DNA of 64,000 bases from Macrostomum lignano (Eukaryota). The notes beneath the pieces are model-generated. The model saw only the letters and a program-made list of their open reading frames with translations. It did no database searches and was not told the DNA's origin. The stretch covers positions 62,001-126,000 of the forward strand of contig NIVC01001458.1 in NCBI GenBank assembly GCA_002269645.1, given 5' to 3'. The translations under genes were made by a program, and so were the position numbers. Positions within the stretch are counted from its first letter, which is position 1; each line of letters opens with the position of its first letter. This document shows positions 18,571-63,600 of the stretch, piece after piece.

Positions 18571-18749
18571 CTATAAATAGACAGATATAATAGACAGGTT
18601 AGACGGATAGAGGTGACAACTACAGATTAACTAATTCAAATTGATACAAAATTAAACGACGTGCGGAACATTCGAAGCAAAACAATATCAAAGCAAAATG
18701 TTATTAACGCAAAGAAGAACTGCATTTAGGACCAGAAATTCTTTTGGGA

Positions 18750-20418
18750 TCTGACATGCTCCCTCTGACATCTGGAACAGTATCTGACATGCTCCCTCTG
18801 ACATCTGGAACTGTATCTGACATGCTCCCTCTGACATCTGGAACTGTATCTGACATGCTTCCTCTGACATCTGGAATAGTATCTGACATGCTCCCTCTGA
18901 CATCTGGAACTGTATCTGACATGCTTCCTCTGACATCTGGAATAGTATCTGACATGCTCCCTCTGACATCTGGAACTGTATCTGACATGCTCCCTCTGAC
19001 ATCTGGAACTGTATCTGATATGCTCCCTCTGACATCTGGAACTGTATCTGACATACTCCATCTGACATCTGGAACTGTATCTGACATGCTCCCTCTGACA
19101 TCTGGAATAGTATCTGACATGCTCCCTCTGACATCTGGAACTGTATCTGACATGCTCCCTCTGACATCTGGAACTGTATCTGACATGCTCCATCTGACAT
19201 CTGGAACTGTATCTGACATGCTCCCTCTGACATCTGGAATAGTATCTGACATGCTCCCTCTGACATCTGGAATAGTATCTGACATGCTCCCTCTGACATC
19301 TGGAACTGTATCTGACATGCTCCCTCTGACATCTGGAACTGTATCTGACATGCTCCCTCTGACATCTGGAATAGTATCTGACATGCTCCCTCTGACATCT
19401 GGAACTGTATCTGACATGCTCCCTCTGACATCTGGAACTGTATCTGACATGCTCCCTCTGACATCTGGAACTGTATCTGACATGCTCCCTCTGACATCTG
19501 GAACTGTATCTGACATGCTCCCTCTGACATCTGGAATAGTATCTCACATGCTCCCTCTGACATCTGGAACTGTATCTGACATGCTCCCTCTGACATCTGG
19601 AACTGTATCTGATATGCTCCCTCTGACATCTGGAACTGTATCTGACATGCTCCCTCTGACATCTGGAACAGTATCTGACATGCTCCCTCTGACATCTGGA
19701 ACTGTATCTGACATGCTCCCTCTGACATCTGGAACTGTATCTGACATGCTTCCTCTGACATCTGGAATAGTATCTCACATGCTCCCTCTGACATCTGGAA
19801 CTGTATCTGACATGCTCCCTCTGACATCTGGAATAGTATCTGACATGCTCCCTCTGACATCTGGAACTGTATCTGACATGCTTCCTCTGACATCTGGAAT
19901 AGTATCTGACATGCTCCCTCTGACATCTGGAACTGTATCTGACATGCTCCCTCTGACATCTGGAACTGTATCTGACATGCTCCCTCTGACATCTGGAACT
20001 GTATCTGACATGCTCCCTCTGACATCTGGAACTGTATCTGATATGCTCCCTCTGACATCTGGAATAGTATCTGACATGCTCCCTCTGACATCTGGAACTG
20101 TATCTGATATGCTCCCTCTGACATCTGGAACTGTATCTGACATGCTCCCTCTGACATCTGGAACAGTATCTGACATGCTCCCTCTGACATCTGGAACTGT
20201 ATCTGACATGCTCCCTCTGACATCTGGAACTGTATCTGATATGCTCCCTCTGACATCTGGAATAGTATCTGACATGCTCCCTCTGACATCTGGAACTGTA
20301 TCTGATATGCTCCCTCTGACATCTGGAATAGTATCTGACATGCTCCCTCTGACATCTGGAACAGTATCTGACATGCTCCATCTGACATCTGGAACTGTAT
20401 CTGACACCCTCCATCTGA
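18750..20418. repeat. 33-bp minisatellite (CTGACATCTGGAACTGTATCTGACATGCTCCCT) in COPZ intron
   Basis: Highly homogeneous tandem array; source of the 560-580 aa ORFs. Confidence 0.97.
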
Positions 20419-20588
20419 CAATTAATGACATTCTGTACATCAAAACAGGTGTAGAACTTTTATGTACAATGAGGCCCCCCTGACGACATGGACAACTATT
20501 GGAAAATGGCATCACTAACAACAAGCCATAATGACAATTAAACAACGAAAACTCGACATCATCTACATGGTAGATTGAAGTCACGAAC

Positions 20589-21062
20589 CTGCGTGACGGA
20601 GCCCTCCAACTGCTGCGTGTCGTCTAGTCTGGAGCCGACCCTGGACACCAGCTGGATGCTGTCGGTCTCCAACACGATGCCGCTGTCGCACAGCTCATCG
20701 ATAGCAAGAAATACCAAGTCCAAGCTATCCAACAAGGCGCGCTTCTCCACATTTTTCTTTAAAATCTGCGACACTGCATCGTACAGAGTGTTGAGAGTGT
20801 TAGATAAGATTAGTTCGTTCTCGACCGCGTCTCCAATCACGTAGAAGATTAGATCCACGTTGCTCTTGAATACGCAGGTGTAACCTTCAAACATGACTAT
20901 TTCGGCGGCCAAATTCTTCGACGTCTTGGCAAATAGGCTGGTCTCGAATGCGCGCTGTTCTTTTACAGACGGCATCGAGTCTGCGCCATAGTATTTGGCA
21001 ATAATGCGCCTCCCATCGTTGTCAAGGATGAGGATGGCTTTGATCGTGTGCAACGAGATATC
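20589..21062 (-). CDS. COPZ1: Coatomer subunit zeta, main coding exon (DISLHTIKAILILDNDG...EGSVTQ)
   Basis: Clear zeta-COP sequence (KAILILDNDG, KEQRAFE, ENELIL, KNVEKRALL). Acceptor atttccag at 21063, donor GTTCGT at 20588; 474 nt, phase 0 at both ends. The start-codon exon was not resolved. Confidence 0.93.
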
Positions 21063-37800: not shown

Positions 37801-38680
37801 GTTGATTGCATGAATGCCTCGGGAGAGACGGGTGCGCGATGATGATTAATCTATATGGTTGCGGAACAAGCTGCGTGGTAAATGAATTGAAAACTAGCCG
37901 CTAATTGGATGATTGTTAATCCCGAACTGGATTCCCTTGCATCCCTCAGCCATCTGCATGATGAACGGCGCCACCGGCGAGGAAGTCAAAAAGCGCAGCT
38001 CCATCGAAAACCAGGAGATTGAGCAATTTGAGCCGGAGCCCTTCGACGAGGAAACCGACGATGAGGACGACGTTGACAAGAGGGCGATGCGCCTCATGCG
38101 CTTGGGCAAGAAGCGCGCCATGCGTCTAATGCGTCTGGGCAAGCGCGACTGGGACGACGGCGCGGACGAAGAGAAGCGGGCGATGCGCCTCATGCGCCTG
38201 GGCAAGCGCGAGTGGGAGGAGGAAATGGACGAGGAAAAGCGCGCCATGCGCCTCATGCGCCTGGGCAAGCGTGACAACGACAAGCGCGCCATGCGCCTCA
38301 TGCGCCTGGGCAAGCGTGACAACGACAAGCGCGCCATGCGCCTCATGCGTCTGGGCAAGCGTGACAACGACAAGCGGGCCATGCGCCTCATGCGCCTGGG
38401 CAAGCGTGACAACGACAAGCGGGCCATGCGCCTCATGCGCCTGGGCAAGCGTGACAACGACAAGCGGGCCATGCGCCTCATGCGCCTTGGCAAGCGTGAC
38501 AACGACAAGCGGGCCATGCGCCTCATGCGCCTGGGCAAGCGTGACAACGACAAGCGGGCCATGCGCCTCATGCGCCTGGGCAAGCGTGACAACGACAAGC
38601 GGGCCATGCGCCTCATGCGCCTTGGCAAGCGTGACGACATGGAAGAGAAGCGCGCCATGCGTCTCATGCGCCTTGGCTGA
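31877..38680 (+). CDS. Myomodulin-like neuropeptide precursor, 13 x AMRLMRLamide: join(31877..31919,37950..38680)
   Basis: Exon 1 encodes the signal peptide MRHCTLTLLLAVVA with a phase-1 GTGAGT donor. Exon 2 follows ccctcag and continues (A)ICMMNGATGEEV. 13 KR-AMRLMRLG units (KR-flanked, the last ending at the stop) have acidic spacers. Resembles flatworm AVRLMRLamide peptides (npp-6/mpl, recalled). Confidence 0.92.
32764..36211 (+). mobile_element. Chapaev/Transib-like DNA transposon, 3448 bp, 226-bp TIRs, 4-bp TSD CGAT
   Basis: Ends are CACGGTTGGGCTGG...CCAGCCCAACCGTG. TIRs 32764-32989 and 35986-36211 show only 2 mismatches by eye. CGAT flanks both ends (32760-32763, 36212-36215). Contains a transposase. 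Confidence 0.9.
33344..35380 (+). pseudogene. Transposase with two apparent frameshifts (about 34501 and 35108); about 680 aa if repaired
   Basis: N-terminal Cys/His motifs (HEECRESLCLLC, PTGLCDGCR, CSCELC). Core motifs LGLDGG, TDMKLANILCGLQ..CPYC, PELHLLLG, TPKVHVLLCHV and SEQAVES follow the RAG1/Transib-type DDE layout. Pieces are ORFs 33344-34702, 34554-35165 and 35162-35380. Confidence 0.85.
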
Positions 38681-43351: not shown

Positions 43352-46300
43352 TCAATCGTAGCCACTTTGCTGACTTGGCGGCGCAGCCTGGCCCATTAGC
43401 ATGGCTCCCATTGGCAAACAGGAGAATAACGAAGCTGCCGTAGGTTGAATCATGCCGCCGCCGCTGCCGCTAGCAACAGCACCGGATGCGCTGCCGTAAC
43501 TTGCAGTAGCACCCATTGATGCCGGCTGGGCGCTTAAATCTGGCATCGGACCTTCCAGCCACTGCAACACGATTTTTATAGATACTAAGATTTTCTCATT
43601 AAAACTTTGCATAGCCATATTCGCTGCTTGGCTACTCATAGTAGGCTAAATGAATGTAAACAATGAAGTTAAGATGAAATAAGAAAATTTTCGATAGTCA
43701 AGATTGAGAGACAGTCATTCTGTTTTAGAAAATAGATAGAAGTAGTAGAACTATACTTTCAGAATACTTCCGGTTTTCACACTGAAAGGTCCTACTTCCG
43801 GTTGTCAGAAGGAAGGCCCTACTTCCGGTTGTCAGACCGAAAAGTCCTATTTCCGGTTGTAGAATGAAAGGCCCTATTTCCGGTCGTCACACTGAAAGGT
43901 CCTATTTCCGGTTGTCACACCGAAAGGTCCTACGCCGGTTATCAGACTGAAAGGTGCTACTTTCGGTTGTCAGACTGAAAGGCCCTACTTCCGGTTGTCA
44001 CACTGAAAGGTCCTGCTTCTGGTTGTCACATTGAAAGGTGTTACTCCCGGTTGTTAAAATGAAAGCCCCTAATTCTAGTTGTCACACCAAAAGGTGCTAC
44101 TTCCGGTTGTTAAAATGAGATGCCCTACTTCCAGTTGTTAGAATGATAGGCTCTACTTCCGGTTGTCAGACCGAAAGGCCCCACTTCCGTTTGTCAGACC
44201 GAAAGGCCGTATTTCTGGTTGTCAGACTGAAAGGCTCCACTTCAGGTTATCAGACAGAAAGGCCCCGCTTCCGGTTGTCAAAATGAAAGGCCCCACTTCC
44301 GGTTGTCAGACTGAAAGGCCCTACTTCTGATTGTCAGACTGAAAGGTCCTACTTCCGGTTGTCACACTGAAAGGTCCTACTTTTGGTTGCCATACTGAAA
44401 GGTCATACTTCCGGTTGTCACACTGTAAGGTGCTACTTCCGGTTGTCAGACTGAAAGGTTCTACTTCCGGTCGTAAGTCTAAAAGGTGTTTCCGGTTGTC
44501 ACACTGAAAGGCTCTACTACTGGTTGTCAAATTCGGGGACCCTACTATTGTTCTGCAGATAGTAAATAAATTAAAAACATGCACTCACGTAAACAAGTTG
44601 ATGCTCAGGCTGGGCGGTGGCCATCTCAATGCTGACCTGATACTTGTGCAACAGTGCTGAGCACTGCTGAGCGCAGCTGGCCTCCAGCACAGAGTTACCC
44701 TCGGCTCTGTACAAATCGCGCATCAATGTGCTGGCCCACAATTGAACAGCTTCGTCGGGCATTTGATCGGCAAGCTGCACTGCCGTGTCGACTACATTTT
44801 TAACCTCATCGTATTGGCCAGTGGCAAAGTGAATCTGGCCGAGAACAATTAGCGAACAGGTGAGCATGCGTTTCAGGTTCTCCATGTTGGCCAATTTCAA
44901 GCACTCGCGGATGTACACTCTGCAAGTCGATTTCGGGTGGTGCTTTTCTAGCTAGGTCTTTGTAGTTAAATTATACAAATTATATTAAAGGAGAGAATTG
45001 AAGCACGAAGATCTTGGAGGCTGGCCCAGCAACTGAGGATCTGGGAAGATGGTGGTCAGCAACTGAGGATCTGGGAGGCTGGCCCAGCAACTGAGGATCT
45101 GGGAAGATGGTGGTCAGCAACTGAGGATCTGGGAGGCTGGCCCAGCAACTGAGGATCTGGGAGGCTGGCCCAGCAATTGAGGATCTGGGAGGCTGGCCCA
45201 GCAACTGAGGATCTGGGAGGCTGGCCCAGCAACTGAGGATCTGGGAGGCTGGCCCAGCAACTGACACTCTGGGAGGCTGGCCCAGCAACTGAGGATCTGG
45301 GAGGCTGGCCCAGCAACTGAGGATCTGGGAGGCTGGCCCAGCAACTGAGGATCTGGGAGGCTGGCCCAGCAACTGAGGATCTGGGAGGCTGGCCCAGCAA
45401 CTGACACTCTGGGAGGCTGGCCCAGCAACTGAGGATCTGGGAGGCTGGCCCAGCAACTGACACTCTGGGAGGCTGGCCCAGCAACTGAGGATCTGGGAGG
45501 CTGGCCCAGCAACTGACACTCTGGGAGGCTGGCCCAGCAACTGAGGATCTGGGAGGCTGGCCCAGCAACTGAGGATCTGGGAGGCTGGCCCAGCAACTGA
45601 GGATCTGGGAGGCTGGCCCAGCAACTGAGGATCTGGGAGGCTGGCCCAGCAACTGAGGATCTGGGAGGCTGGCCCAGCAACTGAGGATCTGGGAGGCTGG
45701 CCCAGCAACTGAGGATCTGGGAGGCTGGCCCAGCAACTGAGGATCTGGGAGGCTGGCCCAGCAACTGAGGATCTTGGAGGCTGACCCAGCAACTGAGGAT
45801 CTGGGAAGATGGTGGTCAGCAACTGAGGATCTGGGAAGATGGTGGTCAGCAACTGAGGATCTGGGAGGCTGGCCCAGCAACTGACACTCTGGGAGGTGGC
45901 ACAGCAACTGAGAATCTGGGAAGAAAGAGGCTTGGCCGAACTCACTTGGCCTGGCCGAAGTCGCCCAGCATAAAGGCCAGCAGGCCCCGAACCCAGTGCC
46001 CGGCAGCCCTGAGTCCGTGCGGCGGATCCGGGTGCCGGAATTCGTCCAGCACGGATCGGCAATCGTTCAATCGATTCTGCCTGAGCATGAGCAGGGCCAG
46101 GTTTAGTTGAACCAGGTGCAACAGATCTGAGCGAGGCCGCTCGGCCAGGGCCCGCCTGAACTGGCTCTCAGCGGCACCGAGGCAGTTGGTGCACATGCTG
46201 TACAGGGCTAGCATGGAGCGCGTGTGCGCCGCACGACCGCGCACCGGACACAACTCGGACAGCCGGACACAAGCGGCCAGATCGGATAGGGCACCCGGAC

Positions 46301-49300
46301 GGTCGCCAGACACTAATCGGCATTGGAACAGTTGCTCCTGGTTGATGCGTGGTGGGGGGAGCATCCGGATTGTGAATTAATGATAGGGATCAGTCTAATG
46401 ACTGTCAAAGGCCATTCTAGTGACTGTCAAAGTGCAATTTTAATGACTGTCAAAGGCCATTCTAGTGACTGTCAAAGTGCAATTTTAATGACTGTCAAAG
46501 GCCATTCTAGTGACTGTCAAAGTGCAATTTTAATGACTGTCAAAGGCCATTCTAGTGACTGTCAAAGTGCAATTTTAATGACTGTCAGAGGCAATTCTAG
46601 TGACTGTCAAAGTGCAATTTTAATGACTGTCAAAGGCAATTCTAATGACTGTCAAAGGCCATTCTACTGACTGTCAAAGTGCAATTTTAGTGATTGTCAA
46701 ATTGCAATTCTAATGATTGTCAAAGGCTATTCTAATGACTGTCAAAGTGCAATTCTAATGATTGTCAAAGGCCATTCTAATGACTGTCAAAGTGCAATTC
46801 TAAAGACTGTCAAAGGCCATCATTCTAATGACTGTCAAAGGCAATCCTAATGACTGTCAAAGGCAATTCTACTGACTGTCAAAAGCCATCATTCTAATGA
46901 CTGTCAACGACGATTTTAATGACTGTCAGAGGCAATTCTAGTGACTGTCAAAGTGCAATTTTAATGACTGTCAAAGGCCATTCTAGTGACTGTCAAAGTG
47001 CAATTTTAATGACTGTCAAAGGCAATTCTAATGACTGTCAAAGGCCATTCTACTGACTGTCAAAGTGCAATTTTAGTGATTGTCAAAGTGCAATTCTAAT
47101 GATTGTCAAAGGCTATTCTAATGACTGTCAAAGTGCAATTCTAATGATTGTCAAAGGCCATTCTAATGACTGTCAAAGTGCAATTCTAAAGACTGTCAAA
47201 GGCCATCATTCTAATGACTGTCAAAGGCAATCCTAATGACTGTCAAAGGCAATTCTACTGACTGTCAAAAGCCATCATTCTAATGACTGTCAACGACGAT
47301 TTTAATGACTGTCAGAGGCAATTCTAATGACTGTCAATGACGATTCTAATGACTGTCAAAGGCCATTCTAATGACTGTCAAAGGCCATTCTAATAACTGT
47401 CAAAGGCCATTCTAATAACTGTCAAAGGCCATTCTAATGACTGTCAAAGGCCATTCGAATGACTGTCAAAGGCCATTCTAATGACTGTCAAAGGCCATTC
47501 TAATGACTGTCAAAGGCGATTCTAATGACTGTCAAAGACGATTCTAATGACTGTCAAAGACGATTCTAATTACTGTCAAAGGCCATTCTAATGACTGTCA
47601 AAGGCCATTCTAATGACTGTCAAAGGCGATTCTAATGACTGTCAAAGACGATTCTAATTACTGTCAAAGGCCATTCTAATGACTGTCAAAGGCCATTCTA
47701 ATGACTGTCAAAGGCTATTCTAATGACTGTCAAAGGCGATTCTAATGACTGTCAAAGACGATTCTAATTACTGTCAAAGGCCATTCTAATGACTGTCAAA
47801 GGCCATTCTAATGACTGTCAAAGACGATTCTAATTACTGTCAAAGGCCATTCTAATGACTGTCAATTGCCATTCTAATGACTGTCAAACGGAGATTCTAA
47901 GGGAAAAGCTAGTCACATTTTAGATAATAGGGGGCAGCTCACCTGAATGCACAGCTGCAGCGCTAGAAATAGTCTGTTACTAATATTATTATTCAGACTG
48001 GTAGTTGCGCCTCCAGTTCCGTCTGAAACTGCGCGCAGCTTCTCAAGCTGCATCAGGGCTTTGTCAGCGTAGCGTCGAACCTGCGTTGAGAAAAGCGCAA
48101 GCACGTGGGTTGAGAAACAGTTTAATACCATGTAGTTTGATTCTTTCAAAAATAAAATTTTAATCCAGGTCAACTGACTACAATGCTTTAAGTTAAGTAG
48201 AGTTAGTAGCGGTTAGTACACAGATGACCCAGAGGGGCGGATCATGACGGTCAAGACCCAGGGGGGAGCCTGACGGTCAAGACCCAGGGGAGGGATCCTG
48301 ACGGTCAAGACCCAGGGGAGGGAGCCTGACAGTCAAGACCCAGGGGAGGGAGCCTGACAGTCAAGACCCAGGGGAGGGAGCCTGACAGTCAAGACTCAGG
48401 GGAGGGAGCCTGACAGTCAAGACCCAGGGGAGGGAGCCTGACAGTCAAGACCCAGGGGAGGGAGCCTGACAGTCAAGACCCAGGGGAGGGAGCCTGACAG
48501 TCAAGACTCAGGGGAGGGAGCCTGACAGTCAAGACCCAGGGGAGGGAGCCTGACAGTCAAGACCCAGGGGAGGGAGCCTGACAGTCAAGACCCAGGGGAG
48601 GGAGCCTGACAGTCAAGACTCAGGGTAGGGAGCCTGACAGTCAAGACCCAGGGGAGGGAGCCTGACAGTCAAGACTCAGGGGAGGGAGCCTGACAGTCAA
48701 GACCCAGGGGAGGGAGCCTGACGGTCAAGACTCAGGGGAGGGAGCCTGACAGTCAAGACTCAGGGGAGGGAGCCTGACGGTCAAGACCCAGGGGGCGGAT
48801 CCTGACGGTCAAGGGCAAAAGGGGGACAAGGGGTCAAGAAACAGAGGGGGACAAGGGGTCAAGAAACAGAGGGGGACAAGGGGTCAAAAAAAAGAGGGGG
48901 ACAAGGGGTCAAAAAAAGAGGGGACAAGGGGTCAAGAAACAAAGGGGGACAAGGGGTCAAGAAACAGAGGGGGACAAGAGGTCAAGAAACAGAGGGGGAC
49001 AAGGGGTCAAGAAAAAGAGGGGGACAAGGGGTCAAGAAACAGAGGGGGACAAGGGTCAAGAAACAGAGGGGACAAGGGGTCAAGAAACAGAGGGGGGCAA
49101 GGGATCAAGAAACAGAGGGGGACAAGGGGTCAAGACCTAAAGAGGGGGGGGCAGATCCGAGGGCTCAAGACCTCAAAAAGATGATGTAAAACACCATACA
49201 CTTCCATCGCTAACCTTATCGTAAGTGGCCTCCTGCATGCAGTGGAGCAGAGTGAGCAGATAGGTGAGCACAGACAGCTGCTCCCTGCTAAGCCACTCCA

Positions 49301-52300
49301 GCTGGCCTAGAGCTTCCAGTTCTTCGGACAATTCCAAACCGGAAGACCCATCGGCCGCGGCGGAAACAGACGCGTAACCGGAAGTTGAAGCGGTCGACGA
49401 GCCGGAAGCGGCTGCGGCGACGGCAGCGGCCTCTTCTTGCATAGCCGAATAAGACTGCACAGAGCGTTGCAGCTGGCGCAGGATTGGGCGAGCCTGTTTG
49501 GCCTGGCCAGCCACCAGACTGTTCAACACCTGGACAGGTGGTGGGCATTGTAAAACGTTAAAGAAACCCAGAATCACGCCAGTCTGAACTGGCACATCTC
49601 ACCTCGTTCAGATCCCATCTCAGAATCACGTCAGGCTAAACTGTCACATCTTACCTCGCTCAGATCCCATCTCAGAATCACGTCAGGCTGAGTTGGCACA
49701 TCTCACCTCGTTCAGATCCTATCTCAGAATCACGTCAGGCTAAACTGTCACATCTCACCTCGTTCAGATCCCATCTCAGAATCACGTCAGGCTAAACTGG
49801 CACATCTCACCTCGTTCAGATCCCATCTCAGAATCACGTCAGGCTAAACTGTCACATCTCACCTCGTTCAGATCCCATCTCAGAATCACGTCAGGCTAAA
49901 CTGTCACATCTCACCTCGTTCAGATCCCATCTCAGAATCACGTCAGGCTAAACTGTCACATTTTACCTCGCTCAGATCCCATCTCAGAATCACGTCAGGC
50001 TGAGCTGTCACATCTTACCTCGCTCAGATCCCATCTCAGAATCACGCCAGTCTGAACTGTCACATCTCATCTCGCTCAGATCCCATCTCAGAATAGAAAT
50101 CCCCACTTCCTAAATCCCTTAAACAGATCCCTATCCAAAACCCATAAACTCCATAAATCATTGAGACAGATGACAACTGAACGAAAGCAGAGAATACCAA
50201 TTAAACCCAACAGCTACCTTTACTACACACATATCGCACCTGAATGAGTAAAGAGAAAGTTCTCAACGCCTCCTGTCGTCGCGGATGCGGCATCTGGTCC
50301 ACCAGCTTGGAAGCCACAGTCAGGGTGTTGTGCACCTCGGCCAGCTGCCTGTTGGCTAGCAGCGGCACGCACTTGGCCAGCAGGAAGAGGCCCCTGGCGT
50401 ATTCGCTGCCGTGCTGTTGCGCGTATTGCGAACCGAGCGCCAATAGCTCGCAGGCCCGCGAGGAATCCGATGAGCTGAGGCACTGCGCCTGCTTGAGTAG
50501 GAAGCGGCCGTACCTGCGGTGGCAAATGCATTGGGATACAGTTAGAGTAGCCAGGATTGCGTATGCACCGACATTTAGTTGCTGTGACCATATATGCACT
50601 GACATTTAGTTGCTATGACCATCTATGCACTGACATTTAGTTGCTATGACCATCTATGCACTGACATTTAGTTGCTGTGACCATCTATGCACTGACATTT
50701 AGTTGCTGTGACCATCTATGCACTGATATTTAGTTGCTGTGACCATCTATGCACTGACATTTAGTTGCTATGACCATCTATGCACTGACATTTAGTTGCT
50801 GTGACCATCTATGCACTGACATTTAGTTGCTGTGACCATCTATGCACTGACATTTAGTTGCTATGACCATCTATGCACTGACATTTAGTTGCTGTGACCA
50901 TCTATGCACTGACATTTAGTTGCTGTGACCATCTATGCACTGACATTTAGTTGCTATGACCATCTATGCACTGACATTTAGTTGCTGTGACCATCTATGC
51001 ACTGACATTTAGTTGCTGTGACCATCTATGCACTGACATTTAGTTGCTATGACCATCTATGCACTGACATTTAGTTGCTGTGACCATCTATGCACTGACA
51101 TTTAGTTGCTGTGACCATCTATGCACTGACATTTAGTTGCTATGACCATCTATGCACTGACATTTAGTTGCTATGACTATATATGGACTGACATTTAGTT
51201 GCTGTGACCATCTATACACTGACATTTAGTTGCTGTGACCATCTATGCACTGACATTTAGTTGCTGTGACCATCTATGCACTGACATTTAGTTACTGTGA
51301 CCATCTATGCACTGACATTTAGTTAGTGAAATTTCACTGCTGAGACTGGAATGAGTATTAGCTGGCACTGAAACTTTTTGTTTCTTTTTGTAGTCTTTTA
51401 AGTGATATTAGGCGGAAAGAAACTGTCTACGGAGTGACTTGGCGAAAGCGGCTGTCTATGGAGTGACTTTTGGTGAAAGAGACCCAAAAATTTTATCAGT
51501 TATCACCTTAGCACAACACATCAAGGTCAAGTCACACTGAAACTCACCATTCAGGCAGGTGCTGGCTAAGTCTAGCAGCCTCTTCAAGCAGTTGCGGCAG
51601 TCGAAACGCCCCGCTAAGCTGCTCATTGCTTGAGTACAAATCCGACAGCAGATCAGCGGCGTGAAGGCAAGCGGCTAACAAGTCGGCTACGTCAGTTGAG
51701 CCAGTAGCAAAGAGAGAGCGCAGCTTCCAGGCGGCCTCCAGATGCTGGGCCGCCTTGTCCTGACAGGATCGGGCGGCGTGCTGCATCAGCAGGCGACCAA
51801 TCTGTAGGTTGGTCCTGTCAAGGTTGACCCGGGGGGATTGTGCACTAAATCAACTATCGGGATACGCGCTCATACACTCGCTCACACGAGAGAGCGACCC
51901 TGATAGCTTCCTAATCGTCAAGGCATGTACATTCTCTGCGTCTTGGGGTTGGCCCAAGGACAACTCAAAGAAGGACGGGAAACTGATCTTCTTAGAAAAA
52001 GCTAAGGAGCTGGTTTTCGCGGAAAAAAAGTATAAGGACGGGAAACTACGTTTCTTAGAAAAAGTAACGGAGGCTTGTTTGCGCGGAAAATAGTAGGACG
52101 ATAAACTACGTTTCTTAGAAAAAGTAACGGAGGCTGGTTTTCGCGGAAAATAGTAGGACGGGAAACTACGTTTCTTAGAAAAAGCTGAGGCTGGTTTTCG
52201 CGGAAAAAAGTAGGACGGGAAACTACGTTTCTTAGAAAAAGCTGAGACTGGTTTTCGCGGAAAAAATTAGGACGGGAAACTACGTTTCTTAGAAAAAGTA

Positions 52301-53831
52301 ACGGAGGCTGGTTTTTTGCGGAAAAAAATAAGACGGGAAACTACGTTTCTTAGAAAAAGCTAAGGCTAAAGCTAAAGCTAAAGCTTCTATCTCCGTAGTG
52401 AATTTTTCGGCGAAAACCAGCCTCCTTAACTTTCTGAGTTGTCCTTGGGTTGGCCCTCATTGCTGTGAATTGCACGAAAACCTGAATAGGCTGAGAGTGA
52501 TTGGCAAATATGGCAAAAACTCGCAAGGCTCGGGCTCCAGAAAAGGCGGCTGGAGCCTGAGCAATAGACACTCTTGCCTATTGAGTAGCTAAAATTAAGC
52601 TAAAAAACATGAAAGATTGGCAGTGTGTTCTTACATAACCCGCTGAAAGCGTTACTGCGACAAGGATCGCTAGAGGGTCATAGTAAACAACTCACTAGCA
52701 GCGACTTTAGCGACTTTTTAACGATTAAAACGACCGCAATGCGACGCAAAGGCGGCTGTTAAGTCACGAGCGCATCACGTGAGTTTCGGAATTGCAAGAG
52801 TGGCGAAAACGTCGTTGTGCAAACGCTTAACTTTCTACTAACTTTCTTCTAATAGAGTTTTTATAAATGCGAAATGCGCTCAAGACGCAACTCGGTGATT
52901 CCACAGCGACTCGGGAGCATGCCTCAGAGACGACTCTACGGCCCCATATTTATTACAGAAGCGCACCAGAGTCGTTACAGAGTCGCAGACAATCAAACAC
53001 CTCAAATTGACTTTTGGGCGACTCTTAGACGTATCGTTTTAGAGTCGTCTAGAGTCACTTCTTTCCTATTTCACCTGTGTTATCTGCAACCACTCTCGGG
53101 CGACCCAGGTGACACAGGGACGCTTCTAGGCCGAGACGCATCTGAAGGCTGCGTACGGTTGTTCAGTCCAAGGACTGGGGAGTCGCCACAGACACCCTCA
53201 ATTACCCGAGCTAATGCTGGCACCCACTTTACAGCTGTGTAAACTGAAGCAATGCAGATTTAAGTGTCTTGCTCAAGGACACAAATTGTTCCAGTGCCAG
53301 TGGGATCGGGAATCGAACCCCGACCTTCAAATCGTGAGTCTGACGCTCTGACCATCAGGCCAGAATCTAGATAGCGGGGTCTGCACAAAGTCAAAACTCA
53401 GTAAAGTCAGTCTTGATAGCTCAAAACCTCACAAATTTCGAGCTTGCGTAAGAGAATCTAAATAACATAATGCGGACTTCAGAGATAGTAACGGCAACCC
53501 CCCCACCGCTAATAGTGAAACCAATAAAAGTGCAAACCCACCAAGCCAATTGCAGATCAGTCAATTTGCAGTGCAAAGCCGCTTTTAAACAATGCAAACA
53601 GAGTTGATAATTGCCGCCAACTCTGAACCGCTCGGCCATGCCTAGCAGGGAGGCGTAGCAGGCCTCCTGATCTGCCCATTCCGAGGCGCCGTGAGCAGCC
53701 TGACTGGTCGATGGCGCCGCCGATGACGCCAATGCTTTGCTGCCATGATGCGAAGCCGCAGCGGATGAGACCGGCTCGACCGGCTCCTCCAGAGCGCGGG
53801 ATAAAAAGGATTCTGAGTTCCAATGACTCAT
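43352..53831 (-). CDS. MAU2: MAU2 (Scc4) cohesin loader subunit, 8 exons: complement join(53542..53831,51548..51814,50240..50513,49215..49529,47943..48080,45946..46337,44589..44919,43352..43561)
   Basis: Canonical splice sites with matching phases. Segments YASLLGMAERFR, HLEAAW, GSEYARGLFLLAK, YADKALMQLEKL, LRAAGHWVRGL, CSLIVLGQI, DEAVQLWASTLMRDL and PEHQLVYWLEGP align colinearly with metazoan MAU2 as recalled. An in-frame upstream ATG at 53936 is an alternative start. Confidence 0.92.
43775..44530. repeat. Degenerate 28-bp minisatellite (ACTGAAAGGTCCTACTTCCGGTTGTCAC), MAU2 intron 7
   Basis: Tandem periodicity with divergence. Confidence 0.9.
45010..45922. repeat. 28-bp minisatellite (GAGGATCTGGGAGGCTGGCCCAGCAACT), MAU2 intron 6
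   Basis: Tandem periodicity. Confidence 0.95.
46396..47897. repeat. 22/23-bp minisatellite (TAATGACTGTCAAAGGCCATTC) with 45-bp dimers, MAU2 intron 5
   Basis: Tandem periodicity. Confidence 0.95.
48225..49137. repeat. Two abutting arrays, 28-bp (GACAGTCAAGACCCAGGGGAGGGAGCCT) then about 25-bp (GGGGGACAAGGGGTCAAGAAACAGA), MAU2 intron 4
   Basis: Tandem periodicity; the switch is near 48815. Confidence 0.93.
49570..50093. repeat. 52-bp minisatellite, MAU2 intron 3
   Basis: Unit CTCAGAATCACGTCAGGCTAAACTGTCACATCTCACCTCGTTCAGATCCCAT. Confidence 0.95.
50563..51325. repeat. 31-bp minisatellite (GCACTGACATTTAGTTGCTGTGACCATCTAT), MAU2 intron 2
   Basis: Tandem periodicity. Confidence 0.95.
51965..52370. 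repeat. About 55-60-bp minisatellite (AGGACGGGAAACTACGTTTCTTAGAAAAAG...), MAU2 intron 1
   Basis: Tandem periodicity with length variants. Confidence 0.9.
53137..53362 (-). mobile_element. tRNA-derived CORE-type SINE, copy 2 (MAU2 intron 1)
   Basis: Reverse complement has A-box-like TGGCCTGATGG, B-box GGTTCGATTCC, the core TGTGTCCTTGAGCAAGACACTTAA, and the same 3' part as copy 1. Confidence 0.72.
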
Positions 53832-53939
53832 GGGATGGGGATCGGGGCCGGGACTGTCGAACTGGGAGACTGCAAGGCGAGCGGTGGTGGTGTGCAAGGG
53901 GGCGAATTGGTCTGACTTAAGTGCCCCGCTAAGCATGTC

Positions 53940-59300: not shown

Positions 59301-60216
59301 ACAACATCTGCTTCGTAAATTTATCAGAATATGATCCTATTAAAATCAAGTATGATTGGATTAAAAAACGCAAATATATTTTCTGTTGGCGACCATAGTC
59401 TTGAACAAATAACCAAGAAAAAATGCCCCACAAGGCCACAAGTATTCTTCTTCACTCGTGTACCCATGCAGCTTGCATGTAAAATCATCTTAAACCGTCT
59501 TAATCGGACGTAAATCGGACGTAATTCCTCAAAAATGCTGCTCCTATTTTATTTTTTCATTCTTGATCAAATAGTCAGCTGTTTAGTTGGCAAACTTATT
59601 AATGTTTTACACGTACGTTTTTCTTACTTTTACGCCTTTCTGAAAAGTTATACATGTACTTGCATGGAGCAACTTTAAACTATAAATTGTACCATGGATA
59701 TGTAACCTGTAAATAAATGGATAGCAAGACCTTCATTCTATACTGAATAATAATGAAATGAATGGCTCTAAAAAGCTGCTTTATAGCAATTTGTTTCTAT
59801 AGTTTTAATTCGGTAGTTTAACAAGCAGTTGCAACTACGATCGCTACATTCATTGATCTATATATATAATTTTGCTTACAGTTCTTGTGATTAAATGCGT
59901 ATGTACAGTATACATACTTTTGTCGATACAAGTGTACTTTTTATATTAGATGATGGGCATAGCGTACTAAATACATGCATGCTAGTGTATTGGATGCTGC
60001 ATTTTACACATTATGCAGCATGGTATCAACAGAAAAAATGTACACACGAGCTAATCAGATATTTGAGTACGTTAATTCGGCTGGATTATAAATCTATCTA
60101 CATGTACAAAAATTTCGCACATTTACAAGCTCTGTATCTATATGAAATTATCCTTTGAATGAACTGCTATCCATGTACATGTTGCTCATACAATTTCAGA
60201 CGGCAAATTTAGCAAA

Positions 60217-62763
60217 ATGGAAAAGCTGCTGGTCATTCAGACAGGAGGTAAGAAATTTGAGCTCATCGTTTAGGGCCTGTTCAAACATCAGTTGGATGCA
60301 GGAAACCTACATTGAAAGTAGGTTTTTGAACATACTTATCCTTCCTGGATCCTTTTTAAGGTGTGTCCTTTTTAAGGTCCTCGGGTCATAGGGTCTTTCA
60401 GATCATCAGGCTGGGGCCACCATCTTCCTTCATCATCAGGTTGGGGCCACCATCTTCCTTCATCATCAGGTTGGGGCCACCATCTTCCTTCATCATCAGG
60501 TTGGGGCCACCATCTTCCTTCATCATCAGGTTGGGGCCACCATCTTCCTTCATCATCAGATTGGGGCCACCATCTTCCTTCATCATCTGATTGGGGACAC
60601 CATCTTCCTTCATCATCAGATTGGGGACACCATCTTCCTTCATCATCAGATTGGGGCCACCATCTTCCTTCATCATCAGATTGGGGACACCATCTTCCTT
60701 CATCATCAGATTGGGGACACCATCTTCCTTCATCATCTGATTGGGGACACCATCTTCCTTCATCATCAGATTGGGGACACCATTCCTTCATCATCAGATT
60801 GGGGACACCATCTTCCTTCATCATCAGATTGGGGACACCATCTTCCTTCATCATCAGATTGGGGACACCATCTTCCTTCATCATCTGATTGGGGACACCA
60901 TCTTCCTTCATCATCTGATTGGGGACACCATCTTCCTTCATCATCAGGTTTAGGACACCATCTTCCTTCATCATCTGATTGGGGACACCATCTTCCTTCA
61001 TCATCAGGTTGGGCCCACCATTCCTTCATCATCAGATTGGGGACACCATCTTCCTTCATCATCAGATTGGGGACACCATCTTCCTTCATCATCAGGTTTA
61101 GGACACCATCTTCCTTCATCATCAGGTTTAGGACACCATCTTCCTTCATCATCAGATTGGGGACACCATCTTCCTTCATCATCAGGTTTAGGACACCATC
61201 TTCCTTCATCATCAGATTGGGGACACCATCTTCCTTCATCATCAGATTGGGGACACCATCTTCCTTCATCATCAGGTTTAGGACACCATCTTCCTTCATC
61301 ATCAGATTGGGGACACCATCTTCCTTCATCATCAGGTTTAGGACACCATCTTCCTTCATCATCAGATTGGGGACACCATCTTCCTTCATCATCAGGTTTA
61401 GGACACCATCTTCCTTCATCATCAGATTGGGGACACCATCTTCCTTCATCATCAGATTGGGGACACCATCTTCCTTCATCATCAGGTTTAGGACACCATC
61501 TTCCTTCATCATCAGGTTTAGGACACCATCTTCCTTCATCATCAGATTGGGGACACCATCTTCCTTCATCATCAGATTGGGGACACCATTTTCTTTCATC
61601 ATCAGGTTGGGGCCACCATTTTCTTTCATCATCAGGTTGGGGCCACCATCTTCCTACACCATTTTCCTTCCAATCTTCATGTAGTTTGGTAACCTATTTT
61701 ATAGCTAGATCAAAACTGTCGATTCCCAGGCACCATGGACAAATGCTATCCCAGAGCCATCGGAGGCTACGCATTTGAGTTCGGGGACAGCGGCTATTGC
61801 CGTCAACTATTGGAGCGACAGCTCTCCGATTGGGAGTCGCGATTCGAATTTCTATCGATATTTGCCAAAGACAGTCAGGACATTTCCGACGATGACAGGT
61901 ACGTCTCCGTGTGTGTGCGTGTGCATGCTCAAGAGTCAGCGGATTGGGCACGACTGCTTTAATTGCCTTCTCACTGGCTGCGGTTCGACTGTCACCTTGA
62001 GCTAAGGCAGTATCTAAACTGCCCCCACTAAGGTAATTGCTATAAAAAACCACGCGAACTAATTTATTGCAGAGTAAAATTGGCCGAGGTCATTAAGTCG
62101 AGCGACAGTCGAAGGGTCCTTGTAACGCATGGCACGGACACACTGTTGGACACGGCCAGGTTTCTTCAGAGCTACCTAAAATCAGGGAGGGCAACATGTA
62201 TATTGTCGATATTTTCTTTATAAATAATCAACTATCCTTACCAGTTAACTGCACTAAATATGGAATCCCAGTGCATGATGAATTGAAATTGATGAGTATC
62301 AAAAGGCTCATTAAGGGATTAATCAGACTAGAAAGGCAATTCCCGTTCCGTCCCGTTCCGTCCCGTTCCGTCCCGTTCCGTCCCGTTCCGCCCCGTTCCG
62401 TCCCGTTCCGTCCCGTCCCGTCCCGTTCCGTCCCATTCCGTTCCGAATTAGCACGACAGCTCACGCGCCTAATTCTCTACAGACTTTGACGTCGCCAGCA
62501 CCGCAGCGCCAGTTGTAATTCTGACCGGCGCCAGACTGCCCGGCGCTTTCAAAGACACCGACGCCGATTTAAACATCGGCTTCGCCCTTGGCTGTCTGGC
62601 CGCCGCCAGACCCGCTGCCAGAGACCAGGCCAATGGCGGCAATCCGACAACGTTGCTCAAGCCAGGTGTTTACACCTGTATGAACCTGCGACTCATGCGA
62701 CCCGACGAAGTGGTCAGGAATTTGGAAACCGGAGCGTTTGACTGGCCTGCCTGTTCCGACTAA
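60217..62763 (+). CDS. Short-chain (single-domain) class 1 L-asparaginase, 4 exons: join(60217..60247,61730..61898,62073..62197,62483..62763), about 201 aa
   Basis: All introns are GT-AG with consistent phases (1,2,1). Spliced product: MEKLLVIQTGGTMDKCYPRAIGGYAFEFGDSG...KDSQDISDDDRVKLAEVIKSSDSRRVLVTHGTDTLLDTARFL...PVVILTGARLPGAFKDTDADLNIGFALG...KPGVYTCMNLRLMRPDEVVRNLETGAFDWPACSD*. It has both asparaginase signatures (TGGT, HGTDT). The exon 3 donor (GTATAT) is weak. Confidence 0.9.
60403..61650. repeat. 30-bp minisatellite (CATCTTCCTTCATCATCAGATTGGGGACAC), asparaginase intron 1
   Basis: Tandem periodicity. Confidence 0.96.
62340..62445. repeat. (CCGTT/CCGTC)n pentamer microsatellite, asparaginase intron 3
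   Basis: Seen directly. Confidence 0.93.
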
Positions 62764-63056
62764 CGCGTCACAAATATCCGCATCGATGCGACCGATATTT
62801 CTAAGAAATTCAAAATCCTGCAGAAGTTGTCTGTGGTTGAGCACTAAGACAATCGGTGCAATAAATCACTTTTAGTTGCAAAAAAATTGTTTTGACTGAC
62901 AAATTGATTTGATATTGTACGAGTATTTATTACACCGAATTCGATTTAAATACAAATTAGTCGCGCGCAGTAGACGATTTGAAATTGTTAAATATTACAA
63001 AAATCTGTCAGGCTGTGGGTGTGCTGGACTGTAATTAAACTTTTGGTCTTCTTCGA

Positions 63057-63395
63057 TCGGGACTCATCAGGATTCTGGGATCAGGACTCATCGGGATTCT
63101 AGGATCGGGATTCATCGGGATTCTGGGATCGGGATTCATCGGGATTCTGGGATCGGGACTCATCGGGATTCTGGAATCGGGATTCATCGGGATTCTGGGA
63201 TCGGGACTCATCGGGATTCTGAGATCGGGACTCATCGGGATTCTAGGATCGGGATTCATCGGGATTCTGGGATCGGGATTCATCGGGATTCTGGGATCGG
63301 GACTCATCGGGATTCTGGGATCGGGACTCATCAGGATTCTGGGATCGGGACTCATCAGGATTCTGGGATCGGGACTCATCAGGAATCGGAGATCG
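63057..63395. repeat. 24-bp minisatellite (GGGACTCATCGGGATTCTGGGATC)
   Basis: Tandem periodicity. Confidence 0.95.
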
Positions 63396-63399
63396 TGAC

Positions 63400-63600
63400 T
63401 CATCTCGAGCTGCACACCCTCGCGCTCGTAAAAGTTGGCCATGTAGGCGGCCTTATCCTCATCGGACATGGAGGAGGAACCGCCAGACTCTTCCTTAGCA
63501 GTGTGTCGACACCCACCTTGCCTCCAGCATGTATTAAGTACTGTACGACTGAATATATCTCTTCAGAAGTGTGCAGTTGGTCAATCCAAAACCCCACGAA
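63400..63600 (-). pseudogene. Probable Polinton/Maverick protein-primed DNA polymerase fragment
   Basis: VDTLL / frameshift / KEESG..SDEDKAAYMANFYEREGVQL resembles the recalled Polinton pPolB segment just before the NPG-R..K..LNS-WGK motif. Confidence 0.45.

What the first reader, a model, noticed from the sequence alone, without database searches (positions are those of the whole stretch)
60217..62763. Hidden bacterial-type short-chain L-asparaginase with spliceosomal introns in an animal genome
Seen: four exons splice in frame to about 201 aa with GGTMDK, KDS-D, THGTDT, ILTGA..P, D---N-GFA and PGVY--MN motifs, and a stop right after this single domain. The ORF track shows only part of exon 2. 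Known: this layout matches short class 1 asparaginases such as the roughly 170-aa Rhodospirillum rubrum enzyme, whereas the standard animal enzymes are the long ankyrin-containing ASPG and the Ntn-type ASRGL1/AGA. Inference: either a domesticated horizontal acquisition that gained introns, or an overlooked, patchily retained animal asparaginase family.
Basis: partly seen in the sequence, partly recalled or inferred. Interest (0 to 1): 0.85.

Follow-up and report, generated by a model that had tools for sequence, protein, structure and literature searches.

The report
Unannotated short asparaginase gene in a flatworm
The window (from the flatworm Macrostomum lignano) really does hold a four-exon gene for a 201-residue single-domain asparaginase of the "short-chain" type first described in bacteria, but this gene is an old animal gene found in many invertebrate phyla, not a recent bacterial import.

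Summary
Four + strand exons (60217-60247, 61730-61898, 62073-62197, 62483-62763), all with GT..AG borders, splice in frame to 201 aa. The product matches Pfam Asparaginase N-terminal (E 9e-14). Its best solved relative is the 172-aa Rhodospirillum rubrum short-chain asparaginase RrA.

The host is the flatworm Macrostomum lignano: a neighbouring COPZ exon is 99-100% identical to that species. No M. lignano protein matched the gene, so it looks unannotated there.

The family is not hidden in animals. Short homologues (160-200 aa) are auto-annotated in trematodes, molluscs, a brachiopod, a nemertean, amphioxus, a hemichordate, echinoderms, a tunicate, a nematode, krill and a sponge.

Window intron 1 (phase 1, inside the TGGT motif) and intron 2 (phase 2, in the DxDR Arg codon) sit at exactly the same positions in genes from deuterostomes, spiralians and a nematode. 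The intron-bearing gene therefore predates the bilaterian radiation and recent HGT is refuted.

All catalytic residues are kept except that RrA Lys158 is Arg, as in every animal member sampled. Activity is inferred only. Splice junction 3 is unverified. I found no paper on the animal members. Interest is moderate.

The parts
60217..60247 (+). Exon 1: start codon and MEKLLVIQTG(G), ending in phase 1 inside the second Gly codon of the TGGT nucleophile motif
   Evidence: There is an in-frame stop 57 nt upstream and no other ATG. Homologues start the same way, e.g. trematode MEILVIQTGGT.
60248..61729 (+). Intron 1 (1482 nt, gtaaga..cccag). It is almost filled by a 30-nt minisatellite of 42 copies at 60402-61662.
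   Evidence: The same position and phase are seen in Diadema, Clavelina, Heterobilharzia, Elysia, Branchiostoma and Lineus.
61730..61898 (+). Exon 2 (169 nt): (G)TMDKCYPRAIGGYAFEFGD...FAKDSQDISDDD(R). It carries Thr12, Lys15, Tyr17, Asp58 and Ser59.
   Evidence: The orthologous exon is 160 nt in five other animal lineages.
61899..62072 (+). Intron 2 (174 nt, gtacgt..ttgcag), phase 2 in the conserved Arg67 codon
   Evidence: The same position and phase are seen in Diadema, Clavelina, Elysia, Mytilus, Branchiostoma, Lineus and Mesorhabditis.
62073..62197 (+). Exon 3 (125 nt): VKLAEVIKSSDSRRVLVTHGTDTLLDTARFLQSYLKSGRAT, with Thr88-Asp89 of the HGTDT motif
   Evidence: Read-through of the GT at 62160 is supported by krill HGTDTLLDTARFLASHLKM.
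62198..62482 (+). Intron 3 (285 nt, gtatat..ctacag), phase 1, containing a (TCCCGTTCCG)n repeat at 62341-62445. Its position lies in a variable loop and is not shared with the other animals mapped.
   Evidence: Alternative in-frame acceptors give exon 4 starts at 62507 or 62513.
62483..62763 (+). Exon 4 (281 nt including TAA): YFDVASTAAPVVILTGARLPGAFKDTDADLNIGFALG...PGVYTCMNLRLMRPDEVVRNLETGAFDWPACSD*. It holds Arg187 at the RrA Lys158 position and a lineage-specific 16-residue loop insertion (about residues 151-166, within AARPAARDQANGGNPTTLLK).
62860..62865 (+). AATAAA polyadenylation-like signal 97 nt after the stop
   Evidence: consensus match only
60194..60199 (+). tttcag 3' splice-site-like sequence 17 nt upstream of the ATG. 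It could be an acceptor for a 5'UTR intron or a spliced leader (speculative).
   Evidence: Sequence read. Untested.

Best explanation
This is a genuine, intact, nuclear gene of the flatworm Macrostomum lignano. It has spliceosomal introns and encodes a 201-residue cytosolic short-chain L-asparaginase (scASNase, 'class 1 type s'), the single-domain family whose prototype is R. rubrum RrA.

Origin. [quoted passage not shown] That gene has been kept patchily in flatworms, molluscs, brachiopods, nemerteans, echinoderms, hemichordates, amphioxus and tunicates, in a few nematodes and crustaceans, and in one sponge. It was missing from the gene models of this species.

Inferred mechanism, by homology with RrA. 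[quoted passage not shown] Thr12 acts as nucleophile and forms an acyl-enzyme. Tyr17 and the scASNase-specific Lys15 relay the proton. Thr88-Asp89 plus the basic residue at position 187 (Arg here, Lys158 in RrA) carry out deacylation.

Shown here: the gene structure, the family assignment, conservation of the catalytic residues, the animal-wide distribution and the shared introns. Inferred only: expression, quaternary structure, substrate and activity.
For: Gene model: canonical GT..AG borders and a 606-nt in-frame CDS.

Family assignment:
- PF00710 E 9e-14.
- Best PDB hits are the RrA entries 8uoo etc. at E 7e-13, against 3.5e-5 for typical class 1 enzymes.
- The profile of 86 family members hits RrA over its full length at E 1e-47; the next best hit is 3e-24.
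- A 40%-identical flatworm homologue models at pLDDT 92 and superposes on RrA (TM 0.9, rmsd 2.0 A).

Catalytic residues: Thr12, Lys15, Tyr17, Asp58, Ser59, Thr88 and Asp89 are all present. The window agrees with 33 of 38 columns that are at least 85% conserved.

Host identity and native character:
- COPZ exon 20559-21053 is 99-100% identical to M. lignano.
- MAU2 exons flank the gene.
- GC3 is 0.62, against 0.57-0.75 for host exons.
- The introns carry the same kind of minisatellites as the rest of the window.

Age of the gene:
- The best hits to the window protein are trematodes, the same phylum.
- The profile search lists homologues from at least 11 animal phyla.
- Intron 1 is shared with 6 lineages and intron 2 with 7 lineages. 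Together these cover Deuterostomia, Spiralia and, for intron 2, Ecdysozoa.
Against: - No transcript evidence was available, so expression and the three junctions are unverified. Junction 3 is ambiguous and not conserved.
- The window protein is among the more divergent members. It has two loop insertions and non-conservative changes at two nearly invariant positions (K118P, G177L).
- The residue equivalent to the essential RrA Lys158 is Arg. K158M kills RrA (PMC10949315), and I found no assay of any Arg-type member.
- A distance tree does not resolve where the window protein sits. Window plus trematodes has 32% bootstrap support, sometimes together with two Bacteroidota sequences.
- The one sponge gene is intronless, so presence before Bilateria is uncertain.
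Confidence: 0.85

Rival explanations
1. Ancient horizontal transfer. The family entered animals once from a bacterium before the bilaterian radiation. It then gained introns 1 and 2 and was afterwards inherited vertically with many losses. This concerns only the ultimate origin and is compatible with the best explanation.
For: - The family is abundant in bacteria (7% of species; PMC10949315) and in metagenomes: 7972 proteins passed E 1e-5 among the 8000 candidates scored.
- Animal and bacterial members are about equally similar to the window protein, at 35-47% identity.
- Two Bacteroidota proteins (P0006, P0007), sitting in clearly bacterial operons, score as unusually animal-like and cluster with the flatworm sequences.
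- Vertebrates, insects and most nematodes are absent from the hit lists.
Against: - A dinoflagellate transcript (P0289) and several long, probably eukaryotic fusion proteins (P0012, P0212) also carry the domain. An older eukaryotic presence, or several independent transfers, is therefore equally possible.
- The tree available here is unresolved and has no outgroup.
Confidence: 0.35
2. Recent bacterium-to-flatworm HGT that acquired introns afterwards.
For: The protein belongs to a family described only from bacteria in the literature. In one NJ tree the nearest neighbours were two Bacteroidota sequences.
Against: - Two of the three introns are at identical codon positions and phases in seven other animal lineages.
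- The exon sequence flanking intron 1 varies (GAG|G, GTG|G, GGG|G, GCG|G), so repeated insertion at a fixed proto-splice site is unlikely.
- The best hits are other flatworms.
- Codon GC3 is host-like.
- The NJ sister relation has only 18% bootstrap support (37 of 200).
Confidence: 0.03
3. The locus is a decaying or unexpressed copy, i.e. a pseudogene in the making, in the highly duplicated M. lignano genome. That would explain why no gene model exists.
For: - No M. lignano protein or transcript-derived ORF matched it in a 5.8-billion-protein collection that includes Logan assemblies.
- It has above-median divergence at conserved columns: 5 deviations against a median of 2.
- It has large insertions and a 1.26-kb minisatellite in intron 1.
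Against: - The reading frame is intact over four exons, with all splice sites canonical.
- All catalytic and invariant residues are retained.
- The start context and an AATAAA signal are present.
- A 31-nt first exon separated by a repeat-filled intron is a plausible reason for gene finders to miss it.
Confidence: 0.1
4. The protein is a real enzyme of this fold but not primarily an L-asparaginase. It could be, for example, a glutaminase or another amidohydrolase, or it could be non-catalytic, because Arg replaces the catalytic Lys.
For: - Arg sits at the RrA Lys158 position in the window protein, in 31 of 31 animal members and in 32 of 54 other members sampled.
- K158M abolishes RrA activity.
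- RrA itself has only millimolar affinity for Asn.
Against: - The nucleophile Thr, Tyr, Lys19-equivalent, Ser58-equivalent and Thr-Asp pair are invariant or nearly so across the family, which points to selection for catalysis.
- Arg keeps the positive charge.
- The RrA authors note that Lys158 is only moderately conserved, yet still expect the family to be catalytically active.
Confidence: 0.15
5. Bacterial contamination or misassembly within the animal scaffold.
For: None beyond the bacterial flavour of the family.
Against: - The gene has three spliceosomal introns with host-type minisatellites.
- Host genes flank it on the same contig.
- GC3 is host-like.
- No contiguous bacterial-style ORF exists.
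Confidence: 0.01

Closest known systems
RrA, the 172-aa short-chain L-asparaginase of Rhodospirillum rubrum (PDB 8uoo/8uou; Zhang et al. 2024, PMC10949315). It is the prototype of the scASNases, later called class 1 type s (PMC12951835).
   Same: - Single N-terminal-type asparaginase domain with no C-terminal domain and no signal peptide.
- Full-length alignment.
- Thr16/Lys19/Tyr21/Asp57/Thr87/Asp88 correspond to window Thr12/Lys15/Tyr17/Asp58/Thr88/Asp89.
- RrA is the best solved relative by sequence and, for a flatworm homologue, by fold.
   Different: - Eukaryotic nuclear gene with three introns.
- 201 aa rather than 172 aa, because of two loop insertions (residues about 99-117 and 151-166).
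- Arg187 instead of the catalytic Lys158.
- About 30% identity over the aligned stretch printed (my count).
- Activity untested.
Automatically annotated invertebrate homologues. Examples: Trichobilharzia, Schistosoma and Paragonimus 'L-asparaginase N-terminal domain-containing protein'; Branchiostoma 'probable L-asparaginase periplasmic'; Lingula 'L-asparaginase 1'; S. purpuratus XP_794170.
   Same: - Same family and length class.
- 36-47% identity (BLASTP local alignments).
- Arg at the Lys158 position.
- Shared intron 1 and/or intron 2 positions.
- Trematodes are the best hits.
   Different: - The M. lignano gene is not in the protein sets searched.
- It has a 169-nt rather than 160-nt exon 2, its own intron 3 position and a unique 16-residue insertion.
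Typical class 1 asparaginases (E. coli AnsA/AnsB; animal ASPG, the 60-kDa lysophospholipase; guinea-pig asparaginase 1)
   Same: Homologous N-terminal catalytic domain with the TGGT and HGTDT motifs.
   Different: - These are 320-570 aa proteins with a C-terminal domain, and ASPG also has ankyrin repeats. Here the protein stops after the first domain.
- NCBIfam type I and type II models score far below their cut-offs (36 and 30 bits against 260 and 314).
Truncated or N-terminal-domain constructs of Pyrococcus furiosus L-asparaginase (PDB 4nje, 5b5u)
   Same: Similar size and fold. They are the next structural neighbours after RrA.
   Different: They are engineered fragments of a two-domain enzyme, with 21-23% identity to the modelled flatworm homologue, and do not form a natural single-domain family.

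Membership tests
Short-chain L-asparaginases (scASNase, class 1 type s; prototype RrA) | Homology to the N-terminal domain of class 1 asparaginases (Pfam PF00710) | tested here: met
   PF00710 E 9e-14, 51.9 bits against a cut-off of 22.5, residues 3-150.
Short-chain L-asparaginases (scASNase, class 1 type s; prototype RrA) | Single domain with no C-terminal asparaginase domain, length about 160-180 aa | tested here: met
   - The stop at 62761-62763 falls where 85 homologues end.
- AATAAA lies 97 nt downstream.
- + strand ORFs in the remaining 1.2 kb have no asparaginase hit.
- Length is 201 aa, i.e. 20-40 aa longer than usual, owing to two loop insertions.
Short-chain L-asparaginases (scASNase, class 1 type s; prototype RrA) | Closer in sequence to RrA-type proteins than to typical type I or type II enzymes | tested here: met
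   - RrA chains E 7e-13 against at best 3.5e-5 for typical enzymes.
- Family profile: 1e-47 over the full length against 3e-24.
- Nearly all the listed hits in a 5.8-billion-protein search are proteins of about 160-200 aa; the few exceptions are a 118-aa fragment and longer fusion or duplicated proteins.
Short-chain L-asparaginases (scASNase, class 1 type s; prototype RrA) | Catalytic Thr16, Tyr21, Thr87 and Asp88 (RrA numbering) | tested here: met
   Window Thr12, Tyr17, Thr88 and Asp89. These columns are invariant or nearly so in 85 homologues.
Short-chain L-asparaginases (scASNase, class 1 type s; prototype RrA) | Lys19, a basic residue that is highly conserved in scASNases and absent from typical class 1 enzymes | tested here: met
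   Window Lys15 in GGTMDK. The column is Lys in 84 of 85 homologues. Its role in RrA is described in PMC10949315.
Short-chain L-asparaginases (scASNase, class 1 type s; prototype RrA) | Catalytic Lys158. It is essential in RrA but, according to its describers, only moderately conserved in the family. | tested here: inconclusive
   - The window has Arg187 at this column. The alignment of the family profile to RrA shows K158 opposite the consensus Arg.
- Arg occurs in 31 of 31 animal and 32 of 54 other members, Lys in 22 of 54.
- It is therefore not a family-defining residue, but the chemistry of Arg-type members is untested.
Short-chain L-asparaginases (scASNase, class 1 type s; prototype RrA) | RrA-like fold | tested here: inconclusive
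A proxy, Paragonimus P0003 (40% identical), modelled at pLDDT 92 and pTM 0.87. It matched RrA chains first (E about 1e-17, TM 0.9 by target, rmsd 2.0 A).
Short-chain L-asparaginases (scASNase, class 1 type s; prototype RrA) | Cytoplasmic, with no signal peptide | tested here: inconclusive
   The protein begins MEKLLVIQTGGT, i.e. strand beta-1 starts at residue 3. There is an in-frame stop 57 nt upstream and no room for a leader. This is judged by inspection only; no signal-peptide predictor was run.
Short-chain L-asparaginases (scASNase, class 1 type s; prototype RrA) | Homotetramer that hydrolyses L-asparagine | not testable with these tools
   Needs recombinant protein, an assay, and SEC/MALS or a crystal structure.
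Bilaterian orthologue group of scASNase genes | Shared intron positions: phase 1 in the second Gly codon of TGGT, and phase 2 in the Arg codon of DxDR | tested here: met
   I mapped the annotated proteins exactly, with splicing, onto their loci.
- Intron 1 is shared with Diadema, Clavelina, Heterobilharzia, Elysia, Branchiostoma and Lineus.
- Intron 2 is shared with Diadema, Clavelina, Elysia, Mytilus, Branchiostoma, Lineus and Mesorhabditis.
Typical class 1 asparaginases, type I/II, and animal ASPG | Two-domain chain of 300-400 aa (plus ankyrin repeats in ASPG), passing the type I or type II family models | tested here: not met
   TIGR00519 scores 35.9 bits against a cut-off of 260.5, and TIGR00520 scores 29.6 against 314.3. 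There is no C-terminal domain.
Class 2 (Ntn-type, ASRGL1/AGA) and class 3 asparaginases | Ntn-hydrolase fold (Pfam PF01112) or R. etli-type fold | tested here: not met
   The only Pfam hit is PF00710.
GatD (Glu-tRNA(Gln) amidotransferase subunit D) | Passes the GatD equivalog models, about 400-420 aa | tested here: not met
   15-16 bits against cut-offs of 310-324.

The most novel reading that the evidence does not exclude
The animal short-chain asparaginases, including this unannotated M. lignano gene, are a bilaterian-wide third lineage of animal asparaginases, beside ASPG and ASRGL1/AGA, that has escaped the literature. On this reading it stems from a single very old bacterium-to-animal transfer, with the nearest prokaryotic sequences here being Bacteroidota. 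It also works with an Arg in place of the otherwise essential catalytic Lys, which implies a modified deacylation chemistry or a different preferred substrate.
Probability: 0.3. Interest if true: 0.6.

Novelty: new member of a known kind. Interest (0 to 1): 0.4.

Why it matters
The scASNase family was defined in 2024 purely from bacterial genomes, and its describers explain its scattered distribution by HGT (PMC10949315). This locus, and the orthologues it led to, show three things:
- The same family is a normal, intron-bearing nuclear gene across invertebrate phyla.
- Two of its introns date back to the bilaterian ancestor.
- It was lost in vertebrates and in most ecdysozoans.

That adds a third asparaginase type to animal amino-acid metabolism. 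It also provides eukaryotic, uniformly Arg-type variants for enzymologists interested in small asparaginases.

For M. lignano, and for schistosomes, which carry the same gene, it is a missing or uncharacterised metabolic gene.

The point is modest. The proteins are already in public databases under automatic names, and nothing about the mechanism looks new.

Tried and rejected
1. First splice model. Using the GT at 62160 as the exon 3 donor gave a frameshift and stops. I rejected it. The krill and other homologues also show that the exon continues through TARFLQSYLK.

2. Sequence phylogeny. I built an NJ tree of 227 family members with Kimura distances and 200 bootstraps.
- 27 non-flatworm animals form one clan together with 3 unnamed sequences.
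- The window protein's position is unstable: with P0006/P0007 18%, P0038 18%, krill 12%; window plus trematodes, with or without P0006/P0007, 32%.
- No ML program was available, so the tree cannot decide the origin.

3. Naive-Bayes test of animal against prokaryote signature. The window scores -8. That lies between core animals (leave-one-out median +70, minimum -16) and prokaryotes (median -165, maximum -66). Two genuine Bacteroidota proteins also fall in the gap. Not decisive.

4. Checking whether P0006 and P0007 are eukaryotic. They are not: both sit in dense bacterial operons, DciA-scASNase-RsmB.

5. Structure prediction of the window protein. I modelled a flatworm homologue instead.

6. 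A hidden short intron inside the 16-residue insertion of exon 4. No compatible GT..AG pair exists, and 48 nt is too short (sequence read).

7. Literature. Searches for scASNase, short-chain asparaginase with eukaryotes, asparaginase with HGT and metazoa, with Macrostomum, and with Schistosoma or invertebrates found nothing on the animal members.

8. Krill locus. No DNA was available for it.
Full report
**1. The observation**

- The exons are 60217-60247, 61730-61898, 62073-62197 and 62483-62763.
- Each intron starts with GT and ends with AG.
- The CDS is 606 nt and gives 201 aa.

My first attempt used the GT at 62160 as the third donor and broke the frame. The working donor is 62198 (gtatat).

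The listed motifs are all present: QTGGTMDK, KDSQD, THGTDT, ILTGARLP, DADLNIGFA and PGVYTCMN.

ATG 60217 is preceded by an in-frame stop 57 nt upstream, with no other ATG between them. An AATAAA lies 97 nt after the TAA.

One uncertainty remains. Donor 62198 can also join in frame to acceptors that start exon 4 at 62507 or 62513, giving 193 or 191 aa. The 62483 start has the best pyrimidine tract. No RNA data were available to decide.

**2. What the protein is**

- Pfam gives a single hit, Asparaginase N-terminal PF00710 (E 9e-14).
- NCBIfam type I, type II and GatD models score far below their cut-offs.
- Against PDB sequences, the eight best hits are the 185-residue chains of entries 8uoo to 8upc (E 7e-13 to 7e-12). 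Typical two-domain asparaginases start at 3.5e-5.
- Foldseek later identified those entries as the 'atypical asparaginase from Rhodospirillum rubrum'.
- A profile of 86 family members, with the window protein as first row, matches RrA over its whole length at E 1e-47. The next best hit is 3e-24.

The describers of RrA defined a family of short-chain asparaginases (scASNases, 160-180 aa, cytoplasmic). They found it in about 7% of the bacterial species they surveyed. Their text does not mention eukaryotes or animals (PMC10949315). A 2026 paper classifies these enzymes as class 1 'type s' (PMC12951835).

The residues critical in RrA are Thr16, Lys19, Tyr21, Thr87 and Asp88; RrA Asp57 and the residue matching EcAII Ser58 lie at the active site as well. 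They correspond to window Thr12, Lys15, Tyr17, Thr88 and Asp89, with Asp58 and Ser59. All of these columns are invariant or nearly so across 85 homologues.

The exception is RrA Lys158.
- The profile-to-RrA alignment puts it opposite window Arg187.
- That column is Arg in 31 of 31 animal members and in 32 of 54 others, and Lys in 22 of 54.
- K158M inactivates RrA, and its authors note that this Lys is only moderately conserved.

The window protein agrees with 33 of 38 columns conserved at 85% or more. Its non-conservative deviations are K118P and G177L. It also carries two loop insertions, one of them unique.

The spliced protein could not be submitted for structure prediction. A 40%-identical flatworm homologue (P0003) modelled at pLDDT 92 and superposed best on RrA (TM 0.9, rmsd 2.0 A).

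**3. Whose genome it is**

- The ORF at 20559-21053 (-) is a coatomer zeta exon, 99-100% identical to Macrostomum lignano proteins. The next best species reach 63% or less.
- Exons of the cohesin loader MAU2 lie at 44571-50605 (-).
- The window is packed with minisatellites (39 TRF rows). One fills intron 1 of the asparaginase gene (30 nt x 42 copies, 60402-61662). A 10-nt repeat sits in intron 3.
- The gene's GC3 (0.62) lies within the range of the neighbouring host exons (0.57-0.75).

The gene is therefore native to the flatworm scaffold and is not contamination. No M. lignano protein appeared among its homologues, although M. lignano proteomes are in that collection. The gene seems to be missing from the annotations held there.

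**4. Distribution**

The single-sequence search returned trematode proteins as the best hits (Trichobilharzia, Heterobilharzia, Paragonimus; E 5e-33 to 2e-31). Next came krill, sea urchins, a tunicate, Elysia, Mytilus and a nematode, interleaved with bacterial and metagenomic proteins of the same length.

A profile of eleven animal sequences added:
- Schistosoma and Fasciolopsis;
- Lingula, Lineus and three Branchiostoma species;
- Glandiceps, Acanthaster and Amphiura;
- many bivalves and gastropods;
- the sponge Corticium;
- a dinoflagellate transcript.

These entries carry automatic names such as 'uncharacterized protein LOC...', 'probable L-asparaginase periplasmic' and 'L-asparaginase 1'. 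Vertebrates and insects do not appear among the hits listed.

**5. Recent transfer or old animal gene**

I fetched the loci of nine annotated animal homologues. I then mapped each protein exactly onto its DNA with a spliced matcher.

Window intron 1 is in phase 1, inside the second Gly codon of TGGT. The identical position and phase occur in:
- Diadema (echinoderm);
- Branchiostoma;
- Clavelina (tunicate);
- Elysia (mollusc);
- Lineus (nemertean);
- Heterobilharzia (trematode).

Window intron 2 is in phase 2, in the Arg codon of DxDR. It is identical in Diadema, Branchiostoma, Clavelina, Elysia, Mytilus, Lineus and the nematode Mesorhabditis.

The exon between these two introns is 160 nt in five lineages and 169 nt here. 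The exonic bases before intron 1 differ among lineages (GAG, GTG, GGG, GCG). That argues against repeated insertion into one proto-splice site.

Intron 3 lies in a length-variable loop and is not shared. Clavelina and Elysia share a phase-0 intron a few codons downstream. Heterobilharzia and Mesorhabditis share a phase-1 intron in LTG. The sponge gene has no introns.

Two identical intron positions spanning Deuterostomia, Spiralia and Ecdysozoa mean the intron-bearing gene existed in the bilaterian ancestor.

**6. What sequence trees add**

Sequence trees add little.
- In an NJ tree of 227 members, 27 non-flatworm animals form one clan with three unnamed sequences.
- The trematodes are monophyletic in 88% of bootstraps.
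- The window protein's neighbours change from replicate to replicate. Window plus trematodes, with or without two Bacteroidota proteins, reaches 32%.
- Those two proteins (P0006, P0007) are truly bacterial, sitting in DciA-scASNase-RsmB operons. They are unusually animal-like by a naive-Bayes signature, where the window protein also falls between the two groups.

The ultimate origin therefore stays open: a very old transfer from bacteria, or descent from an early eukaryote. I could not run an ML analysis.

**7. How it most likely works**

- Thr12 attacks the amide to form an acyl-enzyme.
- Tyr17 and Lys15 relay the proton.
- Thr88-Asp89 together with Arg187 activate water for deacylation.

The residues are shown here. 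The activity, the oligomeric state and the competence of Arg in place of Lys are inferred. RrA has only millimolar affinity for Asn, so a housekeeping role in asparagine and nitrogen turnover is the default guess.

**8. Novelty and verdict**

The gene is a new, unannotated member of a known family.

Presence of the family in animals is visible in databases. As far as my searches reach, it is not discussed in the literature. It is not a recent horizontal acquisition.

Interest is moderate (0.4). The shared-intron result and the uniform Arg at the catalytic Lys position are the points worth following up.

Noticed in passing
window 37913-38680 (+): A 255-aa ORF looks like a multi-copy neuropeptide precursor. 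It has an acidic N-terminal part followed by 12 or more repeats of KR-AMRLMRLG-KR(D). After dibasic cleavage and amidation this would give AMRLMRL-amide, which from memory resembles molluscan myomodulins (...MLRL-amide). There is no Pfam hit. The DNA is a 45-nt tandem array.
   Followed up: partly
window 20559-21053 (-): A large exon of coatomer zeta (COPZ) is 99-100% identical to Macrostomum lignano proteins. This identifies the source organism.
   Followed up: yes
window 44571-53936 (-): Several exons of the cohesin loading factor MAU2/SCC4 (Pfam Cohesin_load) are separated by introns that are largely minisatellite arrays.
   Followed up: partly
window 33344-35165 (+): Two long overlapping ORFs (452 and 203 aa) are Cys-rich at the N terminus and have no Pfam hit. 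They could be an intronless gene or the remnant of a mobile element.
   Followed up: partly
whole window, e.g. 9361-10386, 13769-14706, 17209-18298, 18749-20420, 46394-47900: Minisatellite density is extreme: 39 TRF rows, with periods of 10-60 nt and arrays up to 1.7 kb. These arrays create many long spurious ORFs on both strands.
   Followed up: no
window 63035-63469 (-): An ORF begins with the non-repetitive peptide MSDEDKAAYMANFYEREGVQLE and continues into a 24-nt (8-aa, PDPRIPMS-like) tandem repeat. There is only a weak, sub-threshold Cornifin hit. It may be an exon of the next gene downstream, on the opposite strand.
   Followed up: partly
L009 3001-3501 (Corticium candelabrum chromosome OY729830.1): The sponge homologue of the short asparaginase is a single uninterrupted ORF, unlike the bilaterian genes. 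This could be intron loss, a separate acquisition, or the ancestral state.
   Followed up: partly
L003 and L012: A phase-1 intron in the Gly codon of the LTG motif is shared by the trematode Heterobilharzia and the nematode Mesorhabditis. It is absent from the window gene and from the deuterostome and mollusc genes mapped.
   Followed up: no
L006 8001-8498; L007 3977-4474; L008 1311-1808: In the Bacteroidota-like metagenome contigs the short asparaginase sits in a conserved gene string: radical SAM, cyclase, DciA, scASNase, RsmB-type methyltransferase. Start and stop codons overlap between neighbours.
   Followed up: no
proteins P0196, P0012, P0212: Some unnamed metagenomic relatives have unusual architectures. 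P0196 is a tandem duplication of two short-asparaginase domains, the first with HGLDT instead of HGTDT. P0012 and P0212 carry long N-terminal extensions; the P0012 extension looks like the C-terminal part of a GHMP kinase on my reading, which I did not test.
   Followed up: no
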